Below are positions 14,263 through 26,300 of a DNA stretch of 64,000 nt, piece by piece (positions within the stretch are counted from its first letter, which is position 1; each line of letters opens with the position of its first letter). The stretch is from Fimbriosthenelais zetlandica (lineage: Eukaryota). The notes under the pieces are model-generated. The model made no database searches and had not been told where the DNA came from. It saw only the letters and a list, made by a program, of their open reading frames with translations. Where the stretch lies: positions 61,194,001 through 61,258,000 of the forward strand of contig OZ365109.1 in the NCBI GenBank assembly GCA_977030845.1. Reading direction: 5' to 3'. The translations under genes were made by a program, and so were the position numbers.

Positions 14263-14330
14263 TACAGACTGGGAATCGAACCCCGGTCCCTCGCGCTCAA
14301 CGCCAGTGTCTTACCTCTAGGCTATCTGGA
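14263..14330 (-). pseudogene. tRNA-derived (SINE-like) module / pseudo-tRNA
   Basis: Minus strand reads TAGCCTAGAGGTAAGAC (A box) ... GGGGTTCGATTCCC (B box). Acceptor, anticodon and T stems only partly pair. Confidence 0.65.
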
Positions 14331-14392
14331 TCGGTAATCAGTAGCGTCCACACCCTCGCATTTAGCCTCAACCGCCCAGGACAAGGCTAAAT

Positions 14393-15210
14393 CACAATGT
14401 TTAAAATCATTTTGCCCCCCGGACCCCTCCCTGGCCCCCAACGTCCATCCCGACCCATATGTCTACCCCCAGCACTCCCACCAACACCCTTCAAAAACAC
14501 CAGCCCGATTTAAAACGGCTAACCTCTCAAAATCCAGCGGAATAACCCACTGTGTAGGTACTTCCCATAGGCTCCAATGTTAAAAATTAATTTAGCCCCC
14601 CGGACCCCTTCCCAGCCCCCAACCTCCACCCTGACCCCCATGTTCACCCCCGGTATCCACACCAACTCCCTCCAAAAAAATCAGCCCGATTCGATGCTTT
14701 TAACCTGTCTAAATCCTTCGAAATCAGCAAAAGTGTCCCCTCCATAGGCCCAATGTTAAAAATCACTCACGATTACAGGAATGTGTGCTACTGAGCCGGT
14801 TTCCCAGTCTGCTACAATCGACCCTTTCTCTACTTAATATTTGTTATTTTCACTCAAAACCACGGTTATGTTTGTATTATGACCTCTACTGACAAATATG
14901 AAAAGAGCAGAGACGTCAAATGAGGATAACACCGATTTCTGGGAAGTTGACAAATCGGCCGCGCGTATACAGGCCTATAATTTGGCCTTTTAAAAACCTT
15001 AACAGCGCCCTCTCACTAAAAGTCAAAAAGGTTGAATAACTTTGTAAATAATGGGTCTAAAATTACAATTCAAACGGATTATTCTTAGTTGGAAGCACCT
15101 CCATGTATCTATGAGGTTTTTGAGCATCTAAAATTAATTTAAAATTTCGATTTTTCAGAATGGATCAATTTGAGGTATATAGCATTGATCTCTATGGAAG
15201 GACAAGTTAG
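14393..15210 (-). repeat. Left arm of a giant inverted repeat (AT-rich core plus ~180-bp GC-rich subrepeats)
   Basis: Reverse complement aligns by eye along its length to 15805-16620. Subrepeat anchor ccataggc(t)ccaatgttaaaaat at 14566 and 14742; a further partial unit lies at 14110-14225. Confidence 0.9.
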
Positions 15211-15804
15211 TGCGACTGAAGCGACCCGAGGTGCAGCGGCAAAAAGGTGAACTACACTACTATGATCCAGCACTGTATCCAGCACAAACCTCGCCTCCTC
15301 GCCTCACCGGGACAGAACTCCTTCTATGATCTAGCCAACGATGAGCGCACTCTACACCTGAAGAGATAAGGGGGTGGCGAGGGGGGGGGGGAGAATAAAT
15401 AAGATAAAAGTTCATGCTATTTGTACTATTTTCTTTGGGAGAGCCGGGAGGAGCCCCAAATTAACCTGTAAAATGCGTAGAATTTTACCATGTTCTCAAT
15501 GACAAACAAGTACCTTAATTTTTTAACCCCAGAACCTTATCCTAACTCCCAACCCCTCCCACCCGCACAGAAAAGATATTGCCCGTAGGCCTACATTCTT
15601 AAACGTTAATTTTACTTAGTCCCCGCCTTGCTCTGCCCCCATCCTTAAGCCCACCGCCCATCTCAGCCACTCCCCATTATGATACACCTAATCCCACCTC
15701 ACTCTTACGGAGCGAAGAGTTGGGTCCATTGGTAAACCTATCGTTGACAATACCAAGCTAGTTCCACATTTGGCCGCTGCATATCTTGGGTCCCTACTGT
15801 CGTC

Positions 15805-16620
15805 CTGACTTGCTCCTTCCATAGAGATCAATGCTATAGACCTCAAATTGACTCCATTCTGAAAAATCGAAATTTTAAATTAATTGTAGATGCTCAAAAA
15901 CCTCATAGATACCTGGAGGTGCTTCCAACTAAGAATAATCCGTTTGAATTGTAATTTTAGACCCATTATTTACAGAGTTATTCAACTTTTTCGACGTTTA
16001 GTGAGAGGGCGCTGTTAAGGTTTTTAAAAGGCCAAATTATAGGCCTGTATATGCAAGGCCGATTTGTCAACTTCGCAGAAATCGGGGTTTTCCTCGTCTT
16101 TCCTCTCGGCTTTTTTTTTGAGTTTATCAATAGAGGTCATAAGTTATATATAACCGTGGACTTGAGTGAAAATAATATGTATTAGGTAGAGATAAAGCCG
16201 ATTGGAGAGGACTGGGAAACCGGCTCTGTAGCACACATCCATGTAATCGTGAGTGATTTTTAACATTGAGCCTATGAACGGGACACTTTTGCTGTATCCA
16301 ATGGATTTAGACAGGTTAGAAGCATAGGATCTGGCTGGATTTTTGGGAGATGGTTGGTTGAGGTACTGGGGGTATACATGGGGGTCGGGGAGGAGGTTGG
16401 GGGCCGGGGAGGGGTCCGGGGGCTCATTAATTTTTAACATTGGAGCCTATGGGCAGTACCTACACAGTGGGCTATACCAAGCGATTTTAACAGGTTAGAC
16501 GTTCCAAATCGGGCTGGGGTTTTTGAAGTGAGTTGGTATAGCTGTGCTAGGGGTAGGCATGCGGGGCGGGGTGGAAGTTGGGGGCCGGGGAGGGGTCCGG
16601 GGGTCAAAAATAATTATTAA
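15805..16620 (+). repeat. Right arm of the giant inverted repeat
   Basis: ctgacttgctccttccatagagatcaatgctatagacctcaaattga... mirrors 15210 leftwards. Identity is highest near the inner ends and falls outward. Confidence 0.9.
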
Positions 16621-16664
16621 CGCAGGGTGTATTGAAGTGACCTGAGAGCTTCCTTGTATATGTT

Positions 16665-16733
16665 AGCCAGGTGGTCTAGAGGTAAGAGACTCGCCTGGAA
16701 AGCGAGGGACCGGTTTTCGATTCCCATCTTGTA
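16665..16733 (+). pseudogene. tRNA-derived (SINE-like) module / pseudo-tRNA
   Basis: TGGTCTAGAGGTAAG (A box); perfect stem CTCGC-CTGGAAA-GCGAG; GGTTTTCGATTCCC (degenerate B box); T stem broken. Confidence 0.65.
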
Positions 16734-17680: not shown

Positions 17681-19157
17681 CCCCCTGTAGTATAACAAGA
17701 GCGAGAGGAGGCTGCGAATTTTCGCAGAAGATATGATCGCAGCACAAGTCCTGCGAAAAGTTCAGCGAGTGCTATCTAGCTCCCGCTTGCATAACATCCC
17801 TCGCATCGCTGGAGTTAACGAAACGTCCTTCAGCGATCAGACGCTGCGAGCGGTGGGCTGCGAAAATTCGCAGCCTCCTCTCGCTGAGATATGATATCTG
17901 AGATATGATATCTGAGATATGGTAATCTGAGATATGGTAACATCAGCGAGGGGACGCTGCGAAAATCTCTGTGAGAAAACCTTGTGAAAAGGCGGGAACC
18001 AAAGGCACACTCGCTGTTTCCATAGCAGCAGCGAAATTTTTCATAGCAACAGCGAGATTTTCCATAGTAACAGCGAAATTTTCCATAGCAACAGCGACAT
18101 TTTCCATAGCAACAGCGATTTCGAAGTGTCCGCTCGCTGCCCATGAACCAGATCATATTAATCTGGCCATTGCATGTAGGCCTATAACCTTAGACTAACG
18201 GTTAGGGCCTAGGCCTATGTAGGCCTAGGCCTATGCATTAGGGTAGGCCCTAGGCGTAGGCCTATTTGAAAGTGTACCTTAGGCCACACCCCTGTCCTCA
18301 GCTTGTCCCTGGAAGATAGTCTAGGCGTAGAGGATTAGGCCGGGCTATAGGCTAACCCTCCCCTCTTCTCATGCCCACCACACCGATGGGACGGTCATAA
18401 TTATCTGGTTAGGCTAATAGGCCTATTATCATTATTGCCTATTAGGCCTAGGCCTAGACATGAAGCAGATAACTTAGGCTAATTGTTAAACCAAAAGGGA
18501 AATGTCCTATACCGTTTTTATAGGCCTATAGGGCGGGAACCAAGGGATAGGTTACTGGTCCCAGTGCGCTCGCTGTTTCCATGGCTACAGCGAAAATTCG
18601 CTGCAGCTATGGAAACAGCGAGAGAAGGCCGCCTCAGCCATATCTAGAGTTAACATATGGTAACATCAGCGAGGGGACGCTGCGAAAATCTCTGTGAGAA
18701 AACCTTGTGAAAAGGCGGGAAGCAAAGGCACACTCGCTGTTTCCATAGCAGCAGCGAATTTTTTCATAGCAACAGCGAAATTTTCCATAGCAACAGCGAT
18801 TTCGAAGCATCCGCTCGCTGATGTTACCATATCTCAGATATCATATCTGAGATAACCATATCTGAGATAACCATATCTGAGATAACCATATCTGAGATAA
18901 CCATATCTGAGATAACCATATCTCAGATATCATATCTCAGATAACCATATCTCAGATATCATATCTGATGTTCACTCGCTGATGTTCACCTCGCAGATCT
19001 CCTCGCTGGAGTTCAATCGCAGCATTTTTCGCAGGAAGCGTTTTCGTTAGCTGCCAGGCCAGCTAGCGCTCGCTGAACTTTTCGCAGCATTTTTCCTGCG
19101 ATCATATCTTCTGCGAAAATTCGCAGCCACCTCTCGCTCTTGTTATACTACAGGGGG
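17681..19157. mobile_element. Composite non-autonomous TIR element (1477 bp) with ~95-bp TIRs and internal minisatellites
   Basis: CCCCCTGTAGTATAACAAGAGCGAGAGG... / ...CCTCTCGCTCTTGTTATACTACAGGGGG; first 62 bp have one mismatch; AAT flanks both ends (3-bp TSD). Internal 15-bp and 21-bp tandem arrays and a ~200-bp direct duplication (17931-18140 / 18655-18820). Confidence 0.9.
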
Positions 19158-20038
19158 AATAACTGACTGTAATCATTTCGGGCACTAAAATAAAATTTCT
19201 TTTCTAAGCCCACCATTTGCTGTAGCTTGCGTTTGCGTGAGGTATGAAAGCTTTGGTGATTAATAGGTTCGTTTGTGGTTTGTCTTATCATTTAAAAACT
19301 ATAGTGGTGGTCGGTCCAGATAATATGATATAGGGTAGGCCTATGCCAAGCCTATTGGTGCCAGAATTTATCTAATAGTTTAAATTTCCCGACATAGGCC
19401 TAAGCTACATAATATTATACAGGTCTGAAGGCCTATGTAGCCTATACTGATAAGTTTATATTATTTCATACTATGTTACTAACCGAGGCTTCTTAAGGCT
19501 TCATTGTATAGGTATTTACCTAAAGGCTTAGGTTAAAGCAAAACAAACCTAGTGATTGCTTCGTTATGAAAGACCGACTATTGTATAATTAGTTTGCGAG
19601 TTCTTAGAGGCACCGGATTATTCCCTGAAATTCGACTTGCCTGTGTACCGTAGCTTATATTTTGAAAATCAGGGCCTTATACTCTATACCTGTAAGGTAC
19701 TCTAGCCACCATAGAAAAAGCAAGATAATCTTTAAAGAAATTTCTTACAACTGCTACTGAAAAAGAATATTATATTACTGGAGTTCTGTGGCTTTGACGC
19801 ACATGGAGCTTTAACACGTCAATCTACTGGAGTACAAACTTCCTCTTTGCCAATGACTCTGCAAAATGCGCAGTATATAGATCTATATAATTATGACAAC
19901 TTGAGATTGAAGAGATGGAAATCAGCCAAAAGGATATTTATACTTATAGGGAACTAGAGCTGTAACATTACGCGGAAATTTGTGCGATATTATGTACCGG
20001 TACATATGATCTAGAAGAAAACAAAATCCTGTACCAAC

Positions 20039-20094
20039 ATGAGCTGCATAGGTTGTTCATATGACATTGTCTTCTACCGATTATGGTATTTTTG
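20039..20094 (+). CDS. Paralog 1 coding exon 1 (MSCIGC...RLWYFW)
   Basis: accaacATG; in-frame TAG at 20012; donor TG|GTGAGT. Confidence 0.75.
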
Positions 20095-20187
20095 GTGAGT
20101 AAAAGTTATTATTGCTTTTCTATACGCCCTACACATGAAATAATTCGTTCTGTTTAGTCCTATAGGCCTACATGTGCATTTTAAAGC

Positions 20188-20254
<67 letters not shown>

Positions 20255-20960
20255 TGTATACGTACCAGGCTGTACGTGTTAAAGTTCAATATATGTAAAA
20301 AGACCACTATTACACCTTGTGCTGGAGGCTTTCACCTTTAATTATACGAATTGCGGTTATTGCAGGTTCGCTCTTTTCTGGGTGGGATTTGTTTTGTTCG
20401 CCTTTTGTATCGGCTGCTTTAAGAAATACAAGAACCTGAAACATGCACAGGTCATTCAGTCCCCCGGATCTCAACCATGCTCAAATTATAATAGCAACTA
20501 CGGCCAGGTCAGAAGACCTCCACAAAGAGGTGAGATTATACAAATATAAACATTATTATCAATTTTGCAAGCCAACACCAGTGAAATTCTATTATCCTCA
20601 AGCAATTTCCCTTACATTTTAAGTTATATTTTGGGTATATTTATATCATTGTCATAATTATCAGGTCCTGCCAGACTGATAACCTTAAATACACAAATGC
20701 CAAACCAGAGGGCGCCTCAGGTTGTTCCACAGCCTCCTCCATCTTACTCATCTGCTATAGCCGCCACACCGACATCAGCGTTACCTCCAGGCTATAATTC
20801 AGTCATTGATGGGCCCCAACCCTCATCTAACCCACCCCCACCCCCTCCTATGATGGAGTATAATGAAGCACCTCCAGCCTATACCCAACAAGGCAGTTAC
20901 CCCAATACACAGAAAGATGCTTCCATGGGGTACGCCGAACCCAGGTTACCCGGCTACTGA
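20039..20960 (+). CDS. VOPP1/WBP1-like (Shisa-like) single-pass PPxY adaptor, paralog 1; join(20039-20094,20366-20529,20665-20960), 171 aa
   Basis: Spliced: MSCIGCSYDIVFYRLWYFW|FALFWVGFVLFAFCIGCFKKYK...R|GPAR...PPPSY...LPPGY...PPAY...LPGY*. Canonical GT-AG sites, phases 2 and 1, total 516 nt. RLWYFW matches human VOPP1 from memory; a phase-2 intron in the TM region and PY motifs are family traits. The start codon is inferred. Confidence 0.85.
20191..20250 (+). repeat. (AT)30 microsatellite in an intron of paralog 1
   Basis: Directly visible. Confidence 0.95.
20366..20529 (+). CDS. Paralog 1 coding exon 2 (TM helix and juxtamembrane Cys/Lys)
   Basis: TTATTGCAG| acceptor, AG|GTGAGA donor, open frame. 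Confidence 0.85.
20665..20960 (+). CDS. Paralog 1 last exon (Pro-rich, PPxY motifs)
   Basis: TTATCAG| acceptor in phase 1; TGA at 20958-60; AATAAA at ~21024. Confidence 0.9.
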
Positions 20961-21931
20961 TTTAGGTACGTCTCCAATCTATATAGGCCTACACATAAAA
21001 TTATGTTCACATTTTTAATAATGAATAAAATCGCATACGGTACATAAATTGAAAATCGTACTGTTTATCCTTACTGTATTATCTAAAATATGATTATGTG
21101 ATTTTGTAATTTCAGGATGACCACATCAAATGAATTATTCTACACTTATATTAAGTTATAAGCATTAAGACATTTTGTGGGTGGAAAATGCCTTTTAAAT
21201 ACCATTTGACGGCTTATTATCAGAAACTTTCTGACCCAATATATGTAATCAATGTTATATTCTCTCCTCTGCCTAATTATATTCTCATATGTGCCTGGAA
21301 TGGCTCACACTGTAAAGTAATAGGCCTAATACATTTAAGCAGTTCATGTCCAAACAATTATTGATACCTTTCCAAAGTGTATGATGCAGCCAAGCCACCT
21401 ATTTCAACCTCACCTACATCGTCATATAGGCGTAACACCTCCAACGGCTATCTCAGTATTGAGTATACAAACTCTTATTGATGCACCGATCATGGAAATG
21501 TACTCTTAATTTACGAAATGTGATAGCTTTAATACATTTGTGTATATATGCAGTACATGTATACATAGGATTAAACATTTATCTGACTATTATAAAAGGA
21601 AAACAATTGTGGACTACTTTTTATGACATAGGCCTAAGTGAACACAGATGAGGACATATTTCAAATGAGGATAATAATAGACAATAATAGATTACAGGCC
21701 TCGACCTGGGATATTATACATAATAAAGGGATCATAATATAGTCTAGCATAGTAATCTTTGTGGAATATAAACCAGTATAATATACATATAATATAGCAT
21801 AATATATAATATAATGAGTGCTAAGCAATGTCACGCTTCTTTGAGTTAATGTACAAGGTGTACAATGTACAGTTGTAATAAGTACATGTAGCCTACCTAT
21901 ACCTATATACCTAGACGCCTCGTTTGCCAAT

Positions 21932-21981
21932 ATGCCTTGCCAAACTTGTGCCACCGGTTTTTTCCAAACATGGCAATTTTG
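21932..21981 (+). CDS. Paralog 2 coding exon 1 (MPCQTC...TWQFW)
   Basis: gccaatATG; donor TG|GTGAGT; upstream acceptor CCTAG at 21914. Confidence 0.75.
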
Positions 21982-22829
21982 GTGAGTTGGATTATTTTAT
22001 TTATTTATTCATTTATTTATTTACATAACATTTAATTAATATGAAATAAATATTATTTATTAATATATTTATACATTCATTTATTCCAATCATGAGATGT
22101 GATGTAATACGAGTTTCCATTTCCATTTTAAAGATTATTGTATGTTGCTCAAAATTAAAATACGCATAATTTTTATTATAAACTAATAACACAGAATATA
22201 TCATGTTATTGGATATGTTATAACATTTTATTCTGTAATACCTGATAGTGATACCTGACAATGATTGAATTTCTTTATTGTCGGGCATCATGTAATTGCG
22301 CACCCCTTGTTTATGAATTGCAGGATGACAGCTTTCTGTTTAGGGTTAGTCTTGTTGGCCTTCACGCTCTTCTGTTGTAGGGCCTGTATTATGAATAGGT
22401 TTACCAGAAACCTCAGAGCATCTCATGGCCACCCAGGTAAGATTGTTAATACAATGTCATGTACAAGGCAAATCAGCTTGCAACTAAAAAATTGAAATTT
22501 TACCAAATGTTGAAGGTTTGTAGGAAAGGTACTGGAAAGCAGTGCACCAATATCCTAGTTGGCTTTATTTTGTTACAGGTTACGCAAGGCATGGCAGGGA
22601 TGGTTTAGAGCATCCACCCCAGATGGGAGTACAACCTCCACCATACTCGTCTACCATATCCATGACACAGGCGTCAGCAGGATTACCAACTCCCATACCA
22701 TCAGCCCCTGATAATAGTCAACAACAGCAAAATGGTGCACCAGCCTACCCACCTCCAACTTACTCACAAACGATTAACCCAGAACCAACCTACCTCCAGC
22801 CAACACCTGACAAGCTGCATACACCTTAG
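21932..22829 (+). CDS. VOPP1/WBP1-like single-pass PPxY adaptor, paralog 2; join(21932-21981,22324-22436,22579-22829), 137 aa
   Basis: Spliced: MPCQTCATGFFQTWQFW|MTAFCLGLVLLAFTLFCCRAC...HP|GYAR...PPPY...PPPTY...DKLHTP*. Same intron phases (2,1) and the same Trp split as paralog 1; total 414 nt. Confidence 0.85.
22324..22436 (+). CDS. Paralog 2 coding exon 2 (TM helix)
   Basis: AATTGCAG| acceptor, CAG|GTAAGA donor. Confidence 0.85.
22579..22829 (+). CDS. Paralog 2 last exon (Pro/Gln-rich, PPxY)
   Basis: TTTTGTTACAG| acceptor in phase 1; TAG at 22827-29. Confidence 0.9.
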
Positions 22830-23349
22830 AAGCCTTTTCCAGACCATGTCTGCATAAACCATGCCCGGGCTACACTTGACAAGCTGTGTGCACCTTAGAC
22901 CATCCCTGGGCTACACCCGACAAGCTGTATGCACCTTAGACCATCCCTGGGCTACACCTGACAAGCTGTATGCACCTTAAACCATCCCTGGGCTACACCT
23001 GACAAGCTGTATGCACCTTAGACCATCCCTGGGCTACACCTGACAAGCTGTATGCACCTTAAACCATGCCTGGGCTACACCTAACAAGCTGTATGCACCT
23101 TAAACCATGCCTGGGCTACACCTGACAAGCTGTATGCACCTTAAACCATGCCCCGGCTACACCTGACAAGCTGTATGCACCTTAAACCATCCCTGGGCTA
23201 CACCTGACAAGCTGTATGCACCTTAAACCATCTCTGGGCTATACATGAAAAGCTGTGTACACCTTAAACCATCCCTGGGCTACACCTGACAAGCTGTATG
23301 CACCTGAGACCATCCCTGGTCTACACCTGACAAGCTGTATGCACCTTAG
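22803..23349 (+). repeat. 41-bp minisatellite, ~13 units
   Basis: Unit ACCATCCCTGGGCTACACCTGACAAGCTGTATGCACCTTA(G/A); 13 (GA)CAAGCTG-type anchors counted; no spacers. Confidence 0.97.
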
Positions 23350-26300
23350 AAGCGACTTTCAGGACAAAGTTGACAAGCCAGTATCCGTTCCAGTCCAAAC
23401 GTATCTCCAAGTGATAAGCAGAAGTCTATCTGTTTATGATAATTGTATTTATTTCACATTCAGCCAGCAAGACTGAAATTATTAATGGCCACTGCTTTTG
23501 TACAAAGTGTCTACACAACATCTATGGATACTCATGAGACATTGGAATTAACATAAATACTGAAGAAACGATAACAACCTGCCAAATCCTGAGCCCATTG
23601 TGAACTAAAATGTGTGAAATTATCTTGTTTTTCTGGCAACAAAGACCTTGATCTCGCTCATACGGCAACGATTCACATTTATCTCCAATAGGGCATCAAA
23701 TATCTTGATGGTATTCTCCATCAAGGCACCAAGATTACACACAGCACCTATAGTTACGAAAAATAAAACCACCAGCACAACGATACAATGTCCAGAAATG
23801 ATGGGTTACTTCTAAGATACTGCTAATTTTATATATTTCCCATTCAATGTCTTTGTCGACATTGCATCGGTCTTTTCTTGAGGCCTCAGAAGCATACATT
23901 ACAGTAGTACCCGGCGAGAATACCCATCAACTGTCTTGACCATTTTCTGACTCGCATGCCTCGAGGTGTTTATACGACTGGTCATAAATTTTTTTAAATC
24001 TTTGGTTAGAATAACAATTAGGTCATCCATGTGTTTCCAGCATGTTTTTTCTCATGTGATTTAGGCTCAACTTCTAAAAGACATCCATGTTAATTTGTTC
24101 TCTTGTCATGTCCTGAATGTGTCAAGTATGACCTCTTTAGCTCAGCTAATTTCACTCATATATATGTTTAAGATTAAACATTAAATATTAAAAAATATTA
24201 TGAGTGGTCTGAGAACTGTACATCTGTACCAATGACGATGAAACATGGTCAAAACTACCTAATTATTTCTGACCACAGACTATGTGCATCCTTGAAGAGG
24301 TTGCAGCTATGGGACTTTCCCCACATTTTCACATGGAACATGAATTTATCATCATTTCATTTGCACGTAAGTGTGGAAATTAAGAAATATTCCTTTGAAT
24401 GTACGGCACAAGACAAAGTGGCCACATTAAATTTTATATTTAAGTACCTTCACCATTAATATACCAACATGATCTCATAGTCATACACGGAACATGCAAT
24501 AATCTTCAGGGTCTAATCTGATAAGAATGATCCACTGAAAGGAATTTTCATTTGGCTATTTTGTTCTATATGTATCTTATGTAAAATACCAGATTCCATG
24601 TGAAGGAAGGGCAATAAAGTCCTCTCATTAAGAGTGACCTTCCTTCTTTTCAAGAATATCTGATTTCCACCATAAAGCAGAAAAATCTGGATCCAATTCT
24701 CAGGCACAAATAGCAATAAAACATCTCATCCTACAATGTTTTGTTTTTTCACAACCGTAGAAGTATAACCGTTTGTAATACATGGAATGGGCAGAAGTGA
24801 AGGTGAAGCTTTAGGGCTGATGTGAATAGTGGGGTGCCTCTGAAATGGTACCGGACTTGAAGATGCAATAATTAGTATGATTATGGTGGTGCACAACTTA
24901 CATCTCACCATATGTACAAAATCATAAGTCATTTGATCATGAATATAATATTATTATCTGAAATACACACCATTATCTTCCACATACATCATAATACCAA
25001 CAGTAGACAAAGTCTTGTTTTGTTTTTGTTTTTTGTTTCTTACATTTTTTCTTTTTGTACCAAGCAATTCACTTGTACAATTACAAAAACAGCCAGGTGG
25101 ACTTCACATTTTCACTGGACTCTTTCAATAAATTTCATGGATTCAGTGCAGGATGAGAATTACTCTAACTATTCAAATAAACGTAAAGGTGAATAAGTCT
25201 ATAAATTATATAAAATTATTAAAGCAAGACATCCATGTCAAAATGTTAAATAATAGGATGAACCGAGTCATTTTATGGATAGTCACTCACTTTTGCTCTG
25301 GGCAACAGGATTCGACTTTCACACAATTCTAACACATGTAGAATTTATAAAAATAGTTTCTTTTTATGAGTGCAAATAAAAGTTAGAACTACTTTTCAAA
25401 AGTGCAATACCGGATAACATTTCTTAATGTTCTTAATGCAAATAAAATGTTGAAATAGAATGAGGATGTAATCACACCCAACCAGTTGGACCAGTGAAAA
25501 TGTCATCTAGTTTTCCTTCCAAATGACTACCTACAGTACATACATGTAAGTATTTTATATTCAATGCCATAGTTCATCACTATACACCATTTATTAATTG
25601 ATATATAGACATAATAATTATATATCTATTCTGCTCTGTGCATCATTGCAGCAGCATTCAATGTGATCCAATTATTTGTCTAAAATACATTGTGCAAGAA
25701 AGACTACCTACTTTCACTGATTATTTCTCAATATGCAACATTGATTTCATGTAACTATGTGAGAAGTACGTCATGACCTAGCTTTACATTGACCTTCATA
25801 ATAAGTGTTATCACAGAAGAATCTTTTACACTCCAGACACAAGAGGATCAGAACTCAATAAATAAATACCACCATCTCATAATCACTTATTTCCTAGATA
25901 TTTGATCAAAGGCTTCCTTTAAGAACCTACCAGAACGTCCTTGGATCATTCACTTTTATTGCAACTCAGAGTCATCTATGGGATCTGGATAAAAACAATC
26001 AAATGGACACACCAGTATATACAATAAGGTTAACACAATTAGCATAATAATGTACATACATGTCACATATACACATGGCATTGTACTATTTAAGATAAGC
26101 ACAAAGTGTATACACCTTACACCTTTACAAACATATACCCAAATGTATATGAATGTAAATTCAAATTTGTCGAGTCAGATTTTTTCACCAGGTACTGTTG
26201 AATAGGAAATTTCACCCCCATTATTTCACCAGCAAAACAACATACTATGTGATAATAATATCATGGATTGTAATACTCCATATATATACTTTTCATGATA

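What the first reader, a model, noticed from the sequence alone, without database searches (positions are those of the whole stretch)
20039..22829. Tandem pair of minimal VOPP1/WBP1-like adaptors with only an MxCxxC ectodomain
Seen: two diverged paralogs share intron phases, the split Trp codon and an aligned N-M-x-C-x-x-C start (MSCIGC / MPCQTC), both ATGs with A at -3; paralog 1 has an in-frame TAG nine codons upstream. Tails carry four and two PY-type motifs, and Cys residues follow the TM helix. Known: Shisa-like/STMC6 proteins have a signal peptide, a six-Cys ectodomain, a phase-2 TM intron and PY motifs that bind WW domains of NEDD4-family ligases. Inference: a signal-less, N-terminally truncated subfamily with a CxxC that might bind metal or form a redox switch. 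Undetected upstream coding exons remain possible.
Basis: partly seen in the sequence, partly recalled or inferred. Interest (0 to 1): 0.7.

Follow-up and report, generated by a model that had tools for sequence, protein, structure and literature searches.

The report
Headless VOPP1-like membrane adaptor gene pair
Two neighbouring small genes in this invertebrate (probably annelid) genome encode single-pass membrane proteins that look like stripped-down copies of the VOPP1/WBP1 ubiquitin-ligase adaptors, keeping the membrane anchor and docking tail but only two of the usual six or so outer cysteines; no RNA data or relatives in other species could be found.

Summary
Two three-exon, GT-AG gene models lie at 20039-20960 (171 aa) and 21932-22829 (137 aa). 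Both have intron phases 2 and 1, a split Trp codon, an M-x-C-x-x-C start with A at -3, cysteines at the cytoplasmic end of the membrane helix, and four and two [L/P]PxY motifs, more than composition predicts.

The two are diverged paralogues (z 6.3). The VOPP1/WBP1 link rests on one pattern. A genome-wide search for W-x-F-W plus the split-Trp donor found two canonical cysteine-rich genes on the same chromosome. One is the VOPP1 orthologue; relatives of its membrane exon carry Pfam VOPP1_C. It shares F-Y-K/R-L-W-Y-F-W and the same intron with paralogue 1. WYFW plus this donor occurs only three times in 447 Mb.

In the canonical genes this exon carries five to seven cysteines; here it carries two, so the cysteine loss is real whatever lies upstream. 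CxxC aligns with CCGxxCC and looks like a relic.

Not settled:
- whether the ATGs are the true starts (about 0.6);
- expression, since no sequencing run was listed;
- conservation, since every database search was blank;
- profile-level family membership.

It is a lineage-specific variant of a known adaptor kind, of modest interest.

The parts
20039..20094 (+). P1 exon 1: ATG, the M-S-C-I-G-C start, then F-Y-R-L-W-Y-F and the first two bases of the split Trp codon. Donor is TG|GTGAGT, phase 2.
20366..20529 (+). P1 exon 2: rest of the membrane helix, Cys33 and Cys36 at its cytoplasmic end, a K-K-Y-K-N-L-K-H basic patch and the start of the tail. It ends in phase 1.
20665..20960 (+). P1 exon 3: proline-rich tail and the TGA stop. 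PY motifs are PPSY (20736-20747), PPGY (20784-20795), PPAY (20871-20882) and C-terminal LPGY (20946-20957).
21932..21981 (+). P2 exon 1: ATG, the M-P-C-Q-T-C start, then F-F-Q-T-W-Q-F and the first two bases of the split Trp codon. Donor is TG|GTGAGT, phase 2.
22324..22436 (+). P2 exon 2: membrane helix, then C-C-R-A-C and a basic juxtamembrane stretch. It ends in phase 1.
22579..22829 (+). P2 exon 3: tail with PPPY (22635-22646) and PPTY (22752-22763), then the TAG stop. The last nine codons plus the stop (22803-22829) match the unit of the 41-bp repeat that follows.
20012..20014 (+). In-frame TAG nine codons upstream of the P1 ATG. Its AG is also the only plausible, though weak, acceptor for a hypothetical upstream exon, which would begin at 20015 in phase 0.
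   Evidence: read directly from the sequence
19884..19890 (+). TATATAA, 155 nt upstream of the P1 ATG. This is weak support for a nearby transcription start, because such heptamers occur about 1.9 times per kb in the window.
21803..21809 (+). TATATAA, 129 nt upstream of the P2 ATG. The same caveat applies as for the P1 TATA box.
21024..21029 (+). AATAAA, 64 nt after the P1 stop, a candidate polyadenylation signal. If used, it leaves about 0.9 kb for the P2 promoter.
22855..23348 (+). 41-bp minisatellite of 12 copies in the presumed P2 3' UTR. It is seeded from the end of the P2 coding sequence.

Best explanation
P1 and P2 are a lineage-specific tandem pair of highly diverged duplicates of a VOPP1-type gene, from the WBP1/VOPP1 group of Shisa-like 'STMC6' single-pass adaptors.

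Shown: they keep the aromatic ecto/TM boundary (W-x-F-W), its phase-2 intron in the Trp codon, one membrane helix, cysteines at the cytoplasmic end of that helix, and a disordered proline-rich tail with two to four [L/P]PxY motifs. The homologous exon has lost all but two of the ectodomain cysteines.

Inferred, about 0.6: translation starts at the conserved ATG inside what was the cysteine-rich exon. In that case there is no signal peptide, and the helix acts as a reverse signal-anchor (type III, N-terminus outside, tail in the cytoplasm). Neutral N-flanks and +4 C-flanks favour this orientation. Only 9-14 residues would be exposed outside.

Inferred from family knowledge: the tails dock WW domains of NEDD4-family HECT ligases, which this genome encodes. 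The proteins would then recruit, activate or titrate those ligases at endomembranes or the plasma membrane, as WBP1L, CYYR1 and VOPP1 do. The juxtamembrane cysteines are probably palmitoylated, as in WBP1L. The CxxC is most simply a relic of CCGxxCC. It may form one intra- or intermolecular disulfide.
For: Gene models and signals:
- The models are intact, with consensus splice sites and an exon/intron GC contrast.
- P1 and P2 are homologous (z 6.3, 0 of 2000 shuffles).
- PY motifs are enriched over composition.

Link to VOPP1:
- The genome-wide pattern W-x-F-W plus split-Trp donor gave 48 hits against 18 for the reversed control. Among them were two canonical C*C*CC*CC genes, A and B, on the same chromosome.
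- The WYFW version of the pattern occurs only in A, B and P1.
- P1 shares F-Y-K/R-L-W-Y-F-W-F with gene A.
- Relatives of gene A's membrane exon (83% and 67% identical) carry the precomputed Pfam family VOPP1_C.
- P1 exons 1-2 against A score z 4.7 and against the WBP1 gene z 5.3, with 0 of 2000 shuffles reaching either.
- The WBP1 gene itself passes the Pfam WBP-1 cut-off.

Evidence for the ATG as start:
- Met sits at the same aligned position in both very diverged paralogues.
- Only one of the eight codons just upstream of the ATG is identical between the two genes (the Asn at -1), against about seven of the seventeen downstream.
- Both have A at -3.
- P1 has an in-frame stop nine codons upstream.
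- The candidate acceptors are TAG or AAG, whereas all ten family acceptors examined are CAG.
- No cysteine-rich exon lies upstream.

Partners and published function:
- NEDD4-family genes (four WW domains plus HECT) are present.
- The family's function is described in PMC6991692, PMC11399591 and PMC5578492.
Against: - No RNA evidence is available; no sequencing run was listed.
- No relative was found outside this locus in the 5.8-billion or 1.84-billion protein collections or in the Atlas. Those searches could only use single exons, and the collections do not hold this locus's own ORFs.
- Profile tests are weak. Pfam WBP-1 does not hit the locus.
- A local canonical ecto+TM profile gives P1 only 7.9 bits after bias correction, rank 4 of 3120, and P2 less.
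- A VOPP1_C-like membrane-exon profile does not pick out either gene.
- Similarity to the family is therefore confined to about 10 residues plus gene structure and architecture.
- In P1 a weak AG lies where the canonical cysteine-exon acceptor would be (exon of 80 nt against 78 nt in gene A), and the eight codons it would add contain another Cys.
- Signal-peptide-like ATG exons can be found upstream, but only at the background rate.
Confidence: 0.55

Rival explanations
1. Both genes have an undetected upstream exon encoding a cleavable signal peptide. They would then be ordinary type I members of the family, but with a cysteine-poor ectodomain of two or three cysteines.
For: - Canonical paralogues B and the WBP1 gene start their cysteine exon in phase 0. 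They have plausible signal-peptide exons 0.2-1.5 kb upstream.
- In P1 the AG inside the upstream TAG gives a phase-0 exon of 80 nt, nearly the size of gene A's 78 nt, and the added codons include a Cys.
- In P2 a pyrimidine-rich TAG acceptor lies seven codons upstream of the ATG. A signal-like ATG exon exists at 21252-21316.
Against: - The candidate acceptors are TAG or AAG followed by A, while all ten family acceptors seen are CAG.
- Signal-like ATG exons occur at about the same density upstream of any gene examined, so they are background.
- Met is conserved at the aligned position in both paralogues, and similarity stops there.
- The P1-P2 spacer of 972 nt must also hold the P1 3' UTR.
Confidence: 0.27
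2. The pair are unexpressed or decaying relics of VOPP1-like duplicates, with no present function.
For: - No RNA run was listed and no orthologue was found.
- They have lost the family's defining ectodomain.
- A minisatellite has grown out of the P2 3' end.
- Short uORFs lie in the presumed P1 leader.
Against: - The two copies have diverged to 22% identity in the membrane exon. Yet both keep open frames of 171 and 137 codons in AT-rich DNA, all eight splice signals, the start context, the membrane helix, the basic patch and enriched PY motifs.
- At about 6-7% stop codons per random codon, a 171-codon frame stays open by chance about 1 time in 100,000. That figure is my own estimate from base composition.
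Confidence: 0.1
3. They are unrelated to VOPP1/WBP1: convergent small PY-motif membrane proteins of the functional type of PMEPA1, LDLRAD4 or Commissureless, which only resemble VOPP1 by chance at the helix boundary.
For: - Pfam and local profile tests fail.
- Aromatic residues at membrane interfaces are common.
- The tails are low-complexity sequence.
Against: - WYFW followed by a phase-2 split-Trp donor occurs three times in 447 Mb. Two are canonical VOPP1-type genes and the third is P1.
- Nine consecutive residues match the VOPP1 orthologue.
- Cys, Gly and Cys align with CCGxxCC.
- The genes lie on the same chromosome as A and B.
Confidence: 0.08

Closest known systems
VOPP1 (ECOP/GASP) and its orthologue in this genome, gene A at G000:C1:7.595-7.598 Mb on the minus strand
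   Same: - Single-pass protein with the boundary motif K/R-L-W-Y-F-W-F.
- Phase-2 intron in the last Trp codon.
- Cysteines in or after the helix, then a basic patch.
- Proline-rich tail with PPxY motifs.
- Gene A's membrane exon is Pfam VOPP1_C through its close relatives.
   Different: - Gene A has C, CC and CC in the homologous exon, and presumably a signal-peptide exon. P1 and P2 have only CxxC directly after Met.
- The membrane exon and tail of P1 and P2 show no profile-detectable similarity to the VOPP1_C type.
WBP1 / WBP1L (OPAL1), Pfam WBP-1 PF11669; the gene in this genome lies at G000:C10:45.8387-45.8394 Mb
   Same: - A very short ectodomain, one helix and [L/P]PxY motifs that bind NEDD4-family ligases.
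- Juxtamembrane cysteines, palmitoylated in WBP1L (PMC6991692).
- The second intron is phase 1 in the WBP1 gene as in P1 and P2.
   Different: - WBP1 has the full C*C*CC*CC motif.
- Its boundary reads E-L-W-W-F-W.
- Its intron is phase 1 and two codons earlier.
- The Pfam model does not hit P1 or P2.
Shisa-like / STMC6 superfamily (Pei and Grishin 2012): Shisa, CYYR1, TMEM92
   Same: The overall design of a short ectodomain, an aromatic-rich helix and a PY tail that recruits HECT ligases (PMC11399591, PMC5578492).
   Different: The defining six-cysteine pattern and the signal peptide are missing. The 2012 paper itself is not held in the library, so I could not check its intron statement.
PMEPA1/TMEPAI, LDLRAD4 and Commissureless-type PY adaptors that lack a cleavable signal peptide
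   Same: Function-level analogy only, from my own knowledge: a short or unstructured outer part, a signal-less membrane anchor and cytoplasmic PY motifs for NEDD4-type ligases. PMC5578492 notes that Comm and two PRRG proteins lack signal sequences.
   Different: No sequence or gene-structure relationship was tested or is claimed.

Membership tests
Shisa-like / STMC6 superfamily | Six ectodomain cysteines in the pattern C*C*CC*CC | tested here: not met
   P1 and P2 have two cysteines (CxxC). The homologous exon has 5 in gene A, 7 in gene B and 6 in the WBP1 gene.
Shisa-like / STMC6 superfamily | N-terminal cleavable signal peptide | tested here: inconclusive
   None is present in the models as read. 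Upstream candidates occur only at the background rate. No RNA data were available to fix the 5' end.
Shisa-like / STMC6 superfamily | Single membrane helix with an aromatic motif at its start, followed by a cytoplasmic tail with [L/P]PxY motifs | tested here: met
   L-W-Y-F-W-F in P1 and T-W-Q-F-W-M in P2. There are four and two PY motifs, enriched over shuffled tails.
VOPP1-type genes (this genome's genes A and B) | Phase-2 intron splitting the Trp codon that ends W-Y-F-W at the ecto/TM boundary | tested here: met
   The position and phase are the same in A, B, P1 and P2. The genome-wide pattern gave 48 hits against 18 for the control, and the WYFW form occurs only in A, B and P1.
Pfam VOPP1_C (PF27963) | Match to the family profile | not testable with these tools
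   The model is not in the local Pfam copy. A surrogate HMM built from A, B, P0002 and P0003 ranks P2 254th and P1 2466th of the 2,603 sequences it scored, so there is no support from that test.
Pfam WBP-1 (PF11669) | Match to the family profile above 28.1 bits | tested here: inconclusive
   The six-frame genome search hits only the C10 gene, and single exons of P1 and P2 give nothing. Exon-wise scanning also misses canonical genes A and B. The spliced proteins have no reference and were not submitted.
WW-domain (NEDD4-family) binding adaptors, a functional class | Physical binding of the PY motifs to WW domains | not testable with these tools
   The motifs are present and the ligase genes are present. 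The complex prediction returned no answer.

The most novel reading that the evidence does not exclude
P1 and P2 are expressed, signal-less type III 'headless' derivatives of VOPP1. Their outer part is only 9-14 residues with a single CxxC. That would show that the conserved six-cysteine ectodomain of the WBP1/VOPP1 group can be dispensed with while the membrane anchor and ligase-docking tail persist. It would offer a natural minimal adaptor, or a dominant regulator of NEDD4-family ligases.
Probability: 0.45. Interest if true: 0.45.

Novelty: new variant of a known kind. Interest (0 to 1): 0.3.

Why it matters
The role of the tiny cysteine-knot ectodomain of WBP1, VOPP1 and Shisa-like adaptors is unknown. 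A natural pair that has dropped it but kept the helix and PY tail would be a ready-made comparison. It could help separate ectodomain-dependent functions, such as cargo recognition or dimerisation, from ligase recruitment.

As it stands, the pair is lineage-specific, has no expression evidence, and works by a mechanism already known for the family. The value is therefore modest.

Tried and rejected
- RNA evidence: two run searches listed nothing (one search failed), so read laying could not be used.
- Protein collections:
  - P1 exon 3 found nothing.
  - The WBP1 membrane-exon ORF found nothing.
  - The P1+P2 exon-2 profile against 1.84 billion representatives returned one hit. It is an RCC1-repeat protein matched nine times on K-N-L-S-H-A-Q-E-I, which is spurious.
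  - The Atlas on P1 exon 2 was blank. On gene B's cysteine exon it returned only knottin-like toxin clusters.
- Pfam on single exons found nothing relevant, even for canonical genes A and B.
- Own-genome searches with the P1 exon-2 protein, the exon-2 profile and the exon-1 profile found no further paralogue. The one extra candidate, at C19:9.875 Mb, is an unrelated cysteine-rich domain.
- Complex prediction, with a tandem WW exon of the C19 NEDD4-family gene plus the P1 tail, returned no answer. It counts neither for nor against binding.
- Aligning the two promoter regions showed no conservation beyond CC-T-C-x-TTTGCCAAT-like chance level. The TATA boxes are not significant.
- A paper search for the motif strings gave irrelevant hits. 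Pei and Grishin 2012 is not held.
- The spliced full-length proteins were never sent to database, Pfam, structure or exact-lookup tools, because they have no reference. They were analysed only in scripts.
- A metal or redox role for CxxC was considered and set aside for lack of any supporting feature.
Full report
**What is there.** The window is eukaryotic DNA of about 39% GC. It comes from a 447-Mb, 79-contig assembly, at G000:C1:61,194,001-61,258,000. Another agent's note on this genome calls it an annelid (s1-191767); I did not test that.

I rebuilt both gene models by script.
- P1 has exons 20039-20094, 20366-20529 and 20665-20960, giving 171 aa.
- P2 has exons 21932-21981, 22324-22436 and 22579-22829, giving 137 aa.
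- All introns are GT-AG with strong sites. Their lengths are 271 and 135 nt in P1, and 342 and 142 nt in P2.
- Intron phases are 2 and 1 in both genes, and the first intron splits a Trp codon (TG|G).
- Exons are 36-52% GC and introns 23-34%.
- The locus is single-copy. Only AT-rich simple sequence in the spacer upstream of P2 and in its first intron finds matches elsewhere.

**Are the two genes related to each other, and real?**
- Smith-Waterman scores against segment-wise shuffles give z 6.3 for the full proteins, 6.9 for exons 1-2 and 4.1 for exon 3, with 0, 0 and 1 of 2000 shuffles reaching the observed score.
- Identity in the membrane exon is only 22%, so the duplication is old.
- Despite that divergence, both copies keep open frames, all splice signals, the start context, the helix, a basic juxtamembrane patch and PY motifs.
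- [L/P]PxY counts exceed shuffled tails: 4 observed against a mean of 0.48 (p 0.0006), and 2 against 0.21 (p 0.017).
- This argues for purifying selection on both genes. It does not show expression.

**Link to VOPP1/WBP1.**
- Pfam WBP-1, searched in six frames over the whole genome, hits only one gene, on C10 (32.2 bits, above the cut-off). That gene has C...C...CC...CC, then Y-Y-Y-E-L-W-W-F-W and a helix.
- I then searched the genome for the DNA pattern W-x-F-W with the last Trp split before GTRAGT. It gave 48 matches against 18 for the reversed control.
- I translated the exon upstream of each match. Besides P1 and P2, two matches were canonical cysteine-rich genes on the same chromosome.
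  - Gene A lies at C1:7.598 Mb on the minus strand. It reads C-N-S-Y-E-Y-C-C-G-N-S-C-C, then F-Y-K-L-W-Y-F-W.
  - Gene B lies at C1:26.337 Mb on the plus strand. It has seven cysteines, then M-W-Y-F-W.
- Each is followed by a helix exon that starts in the right phase.
- The WYFW form of the pattern occurs only in A, B and P1 in the whole genome.
- P1 shares nine consecutive residues with A, namely F-Y-K/R-L-W-Y-F-W-F, and the identical intron.
- In a four-way alignment, C3-I-G...C6 of P1 falls on C-C-G-x-x-C-C of A and B. The invariant columns are two cysteines, Trp and Phe.
- Relatives of gene A's helix exon in other assemblies (P0002 at 83% and P0003 at 67% identity) carry the precomputed Pfam family PF27963, VOPP1_C. 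Gene A is therefore the VOPP1 orthologue.
- The WBP1 gene differs: its intron is phase 1 and sits two codons earlier, in the second Trp of E-L-W-W-F-W.
- P1 and P2 are therefore derivatives of the VOPP1 branch.

**Limits of that link.**
- Shuffle tests give P1 exons 1-2 z 4.7 against A and 5.3 against the WBP1 gene. P2 is weaker, at 3.6-3.9.
- I built an HMM from the ecto+TM parts of A, B and WBP1 and searched it against about 3,100 decoy ORFs from this genome.
  - P1 ranks fourth with 7.9 bits after bias correction.
  - Without the null2 bias correction, P1 is the first non-family sequence at 24.6 bits, and P2 ranks 12th.
- An HMM of the VOPP1_C-type helix exon does not pick out P1 or P2 at all.
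- Exon-wise Pfam scans are blank, but they are equally blank for canonical genes A and B, so that result says nothing.
- The case for homology therefore rests on the short motif, the genome-unique motif-plus-intron combination, the aligned Cys-Gly-Cys, the shared architecture and the shared chromosome. I put homology at about 0.85-0.9.

**The ectodomain and the start codon.** In A, B and WBP1 the exon that ends in the split Trp carries 5, 7 and 6 cysteines. In P1 and P2 the same exon carries two. The loss of the cysteine knot is therefore real, whatever lies upstream. An upstream exon could add a signal peptide, but not the missing homologous cysteines.

For the ATG as the start:
- Met is at the same aligned position in two very diverged paralogues.
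- Only one of the eight codons just upstream of the ATG is identical between the two genes (the Asn at -1), against about seven of the seventeen downstream.
- Both genes have the context CCAAY-ATG with A at -3.
- P1 has an in-frame TAG nine codons upstream.
- The only AG sites between that stop and the ATG are TAG|A and AAG|A with poor pyrimidine tracts. All ten acceptors seen in this family here are CAG.
- No cysteine-rich ORF or second W-x-F-W exon exists upstream or elsewhere in the window.

Against the ATG as the start:
- The AG inside P1's TAG lies where the canonical acceptor would be. It gives an exon of 80 nt against 78 nt in gene A, in phase 0 as in B and WBP1. The eight added codons contain a Cys.
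- P2 has a fairly pyrimidine-rich TAG acceptor seven codons upstream of its ATG.
- Signal-like ATG exons with donors can be found upstream, for example at 21252-21316. They occur at a similar density upstream of A, B and WBP1, so they are background.
- The TATATAA boxes 155 and 129 nt upstream of the ATGs are not significant in this AT-rich DNA.

I put the ATG starts at about 0.6.

**Topology and mechanism (inferred).**
- If translation starts at the ATG, the 23-26-residue hydrophobic stretch begins at residue 10-15.
- The N-flanks are neutral and the C-flanks carry about +4: K-K-Y-K-N-L-K-H in P1, and four arginines in P2's R-A-C-I-M-N-R-F-T-R-N-L-R.
- By the positive-inside rule this is a reverse signal-anchor, with the N-terminus outside and the PY tail in the cytoplasm.
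- The tail is where WW domains of NEDD4-family ligases would bind. The genome has at least three genes with WW repeats followed by HECT.
- For the family this is experimentally known. WBP1L binds several NEDD4-family ligases, regulates CXCR4 and is palmitoylated (PMC6991692). CYYR1 recruits WWP1 to late endosomes (PMC11399591).
- I tested one tandem WW exon against the P1 tail with complex prediction. The job returned no answer, which is no evidence either way.

**Conservation and expression.**
- No sequencing run was listed for the locus.
- No relative of P1 or P2 was found in the protein collections or the Atlas. These searches had to use single exons, and the collections did not return even this locus's own ORFs. 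The blanks are therefore weak evidence.
- No further paralogue exists in this genome at the sensitivity reached.
- 'Subfamily' is therefore unsupported. At present this is one tandem pair in one genome.

**Verdict.** The pair is best read as a lineage-specific, cysteine-depleted and probably signal-less variant of the VOPP1-type PY adaptor. It is a new variant of a known kind, and its interest is modest until transcripts and orthologues are seen.

Noticed in passing
window 22803-23350: The 41-bp, 12-copy minisatellite after P2 is seeded from the gene's own end. P2's last nine codons plus the stop are 25/27 identical to the repeat unit, and every unit repeats the TAA or TAG. The array also ends with the same TAGAAGC that follows the real stop.
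   Followed up: partly
window 20191-20251: A perfect (AT)30 microsatellite lies inside P1 intron 1.
   Followed up: no
G000:C1:7595000-7598352 (L008, L044), G000:C1:26337152-26337820 (L011) and G000:C10:45838700-45839480 (L001): These are the canonical VOPP1 orthologue, a second VOPP1-like gene and the WBP1 gene of this genome. The split-Trp intron is phase 2 after W-Y-F-W in the VOPP1-type genes. In WBP1 it is phase 1 and two codons earlier, so the intron has slid or arisen independently.
   Followed up: partly
G000:C19:11910132-11914628; G000:C1:6729110-6737745; G000:C13:19850927-19856218: Three NEDD4-family ligase genes, each with WW repeats followed by HECT exons. They are the presumed partners of PY adaptors in this genome.
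   Followed up: partly
window 17884-19020: A block of 14-, 15- and 21-bp tandem repeats lies directly upstream of the P1 promoter region. With the inverted repeat noted by the scan at 14263-16733, most of the 8 kb upstream of P1 is repetitive.
   Followed up: no
window 11444-11986: An open frame for a single-pass membrane protein with a signal-like N-terminus and a His-rich tail, already noted by the scan. It has no Pfam family above threshold and no W-x-F-W or PY features, so it is unrelated to the pair.
   Followed up: partly
L080:1594-4275 (Logan contig ERR14368248_49038 of a related species): In the related species, an 893-aa open frame lies about 0.5 kb downstream of the ORF containing the VOPP1 helix exon. 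It may be a mobile-element insertion in the following intron.
   Followed up: no
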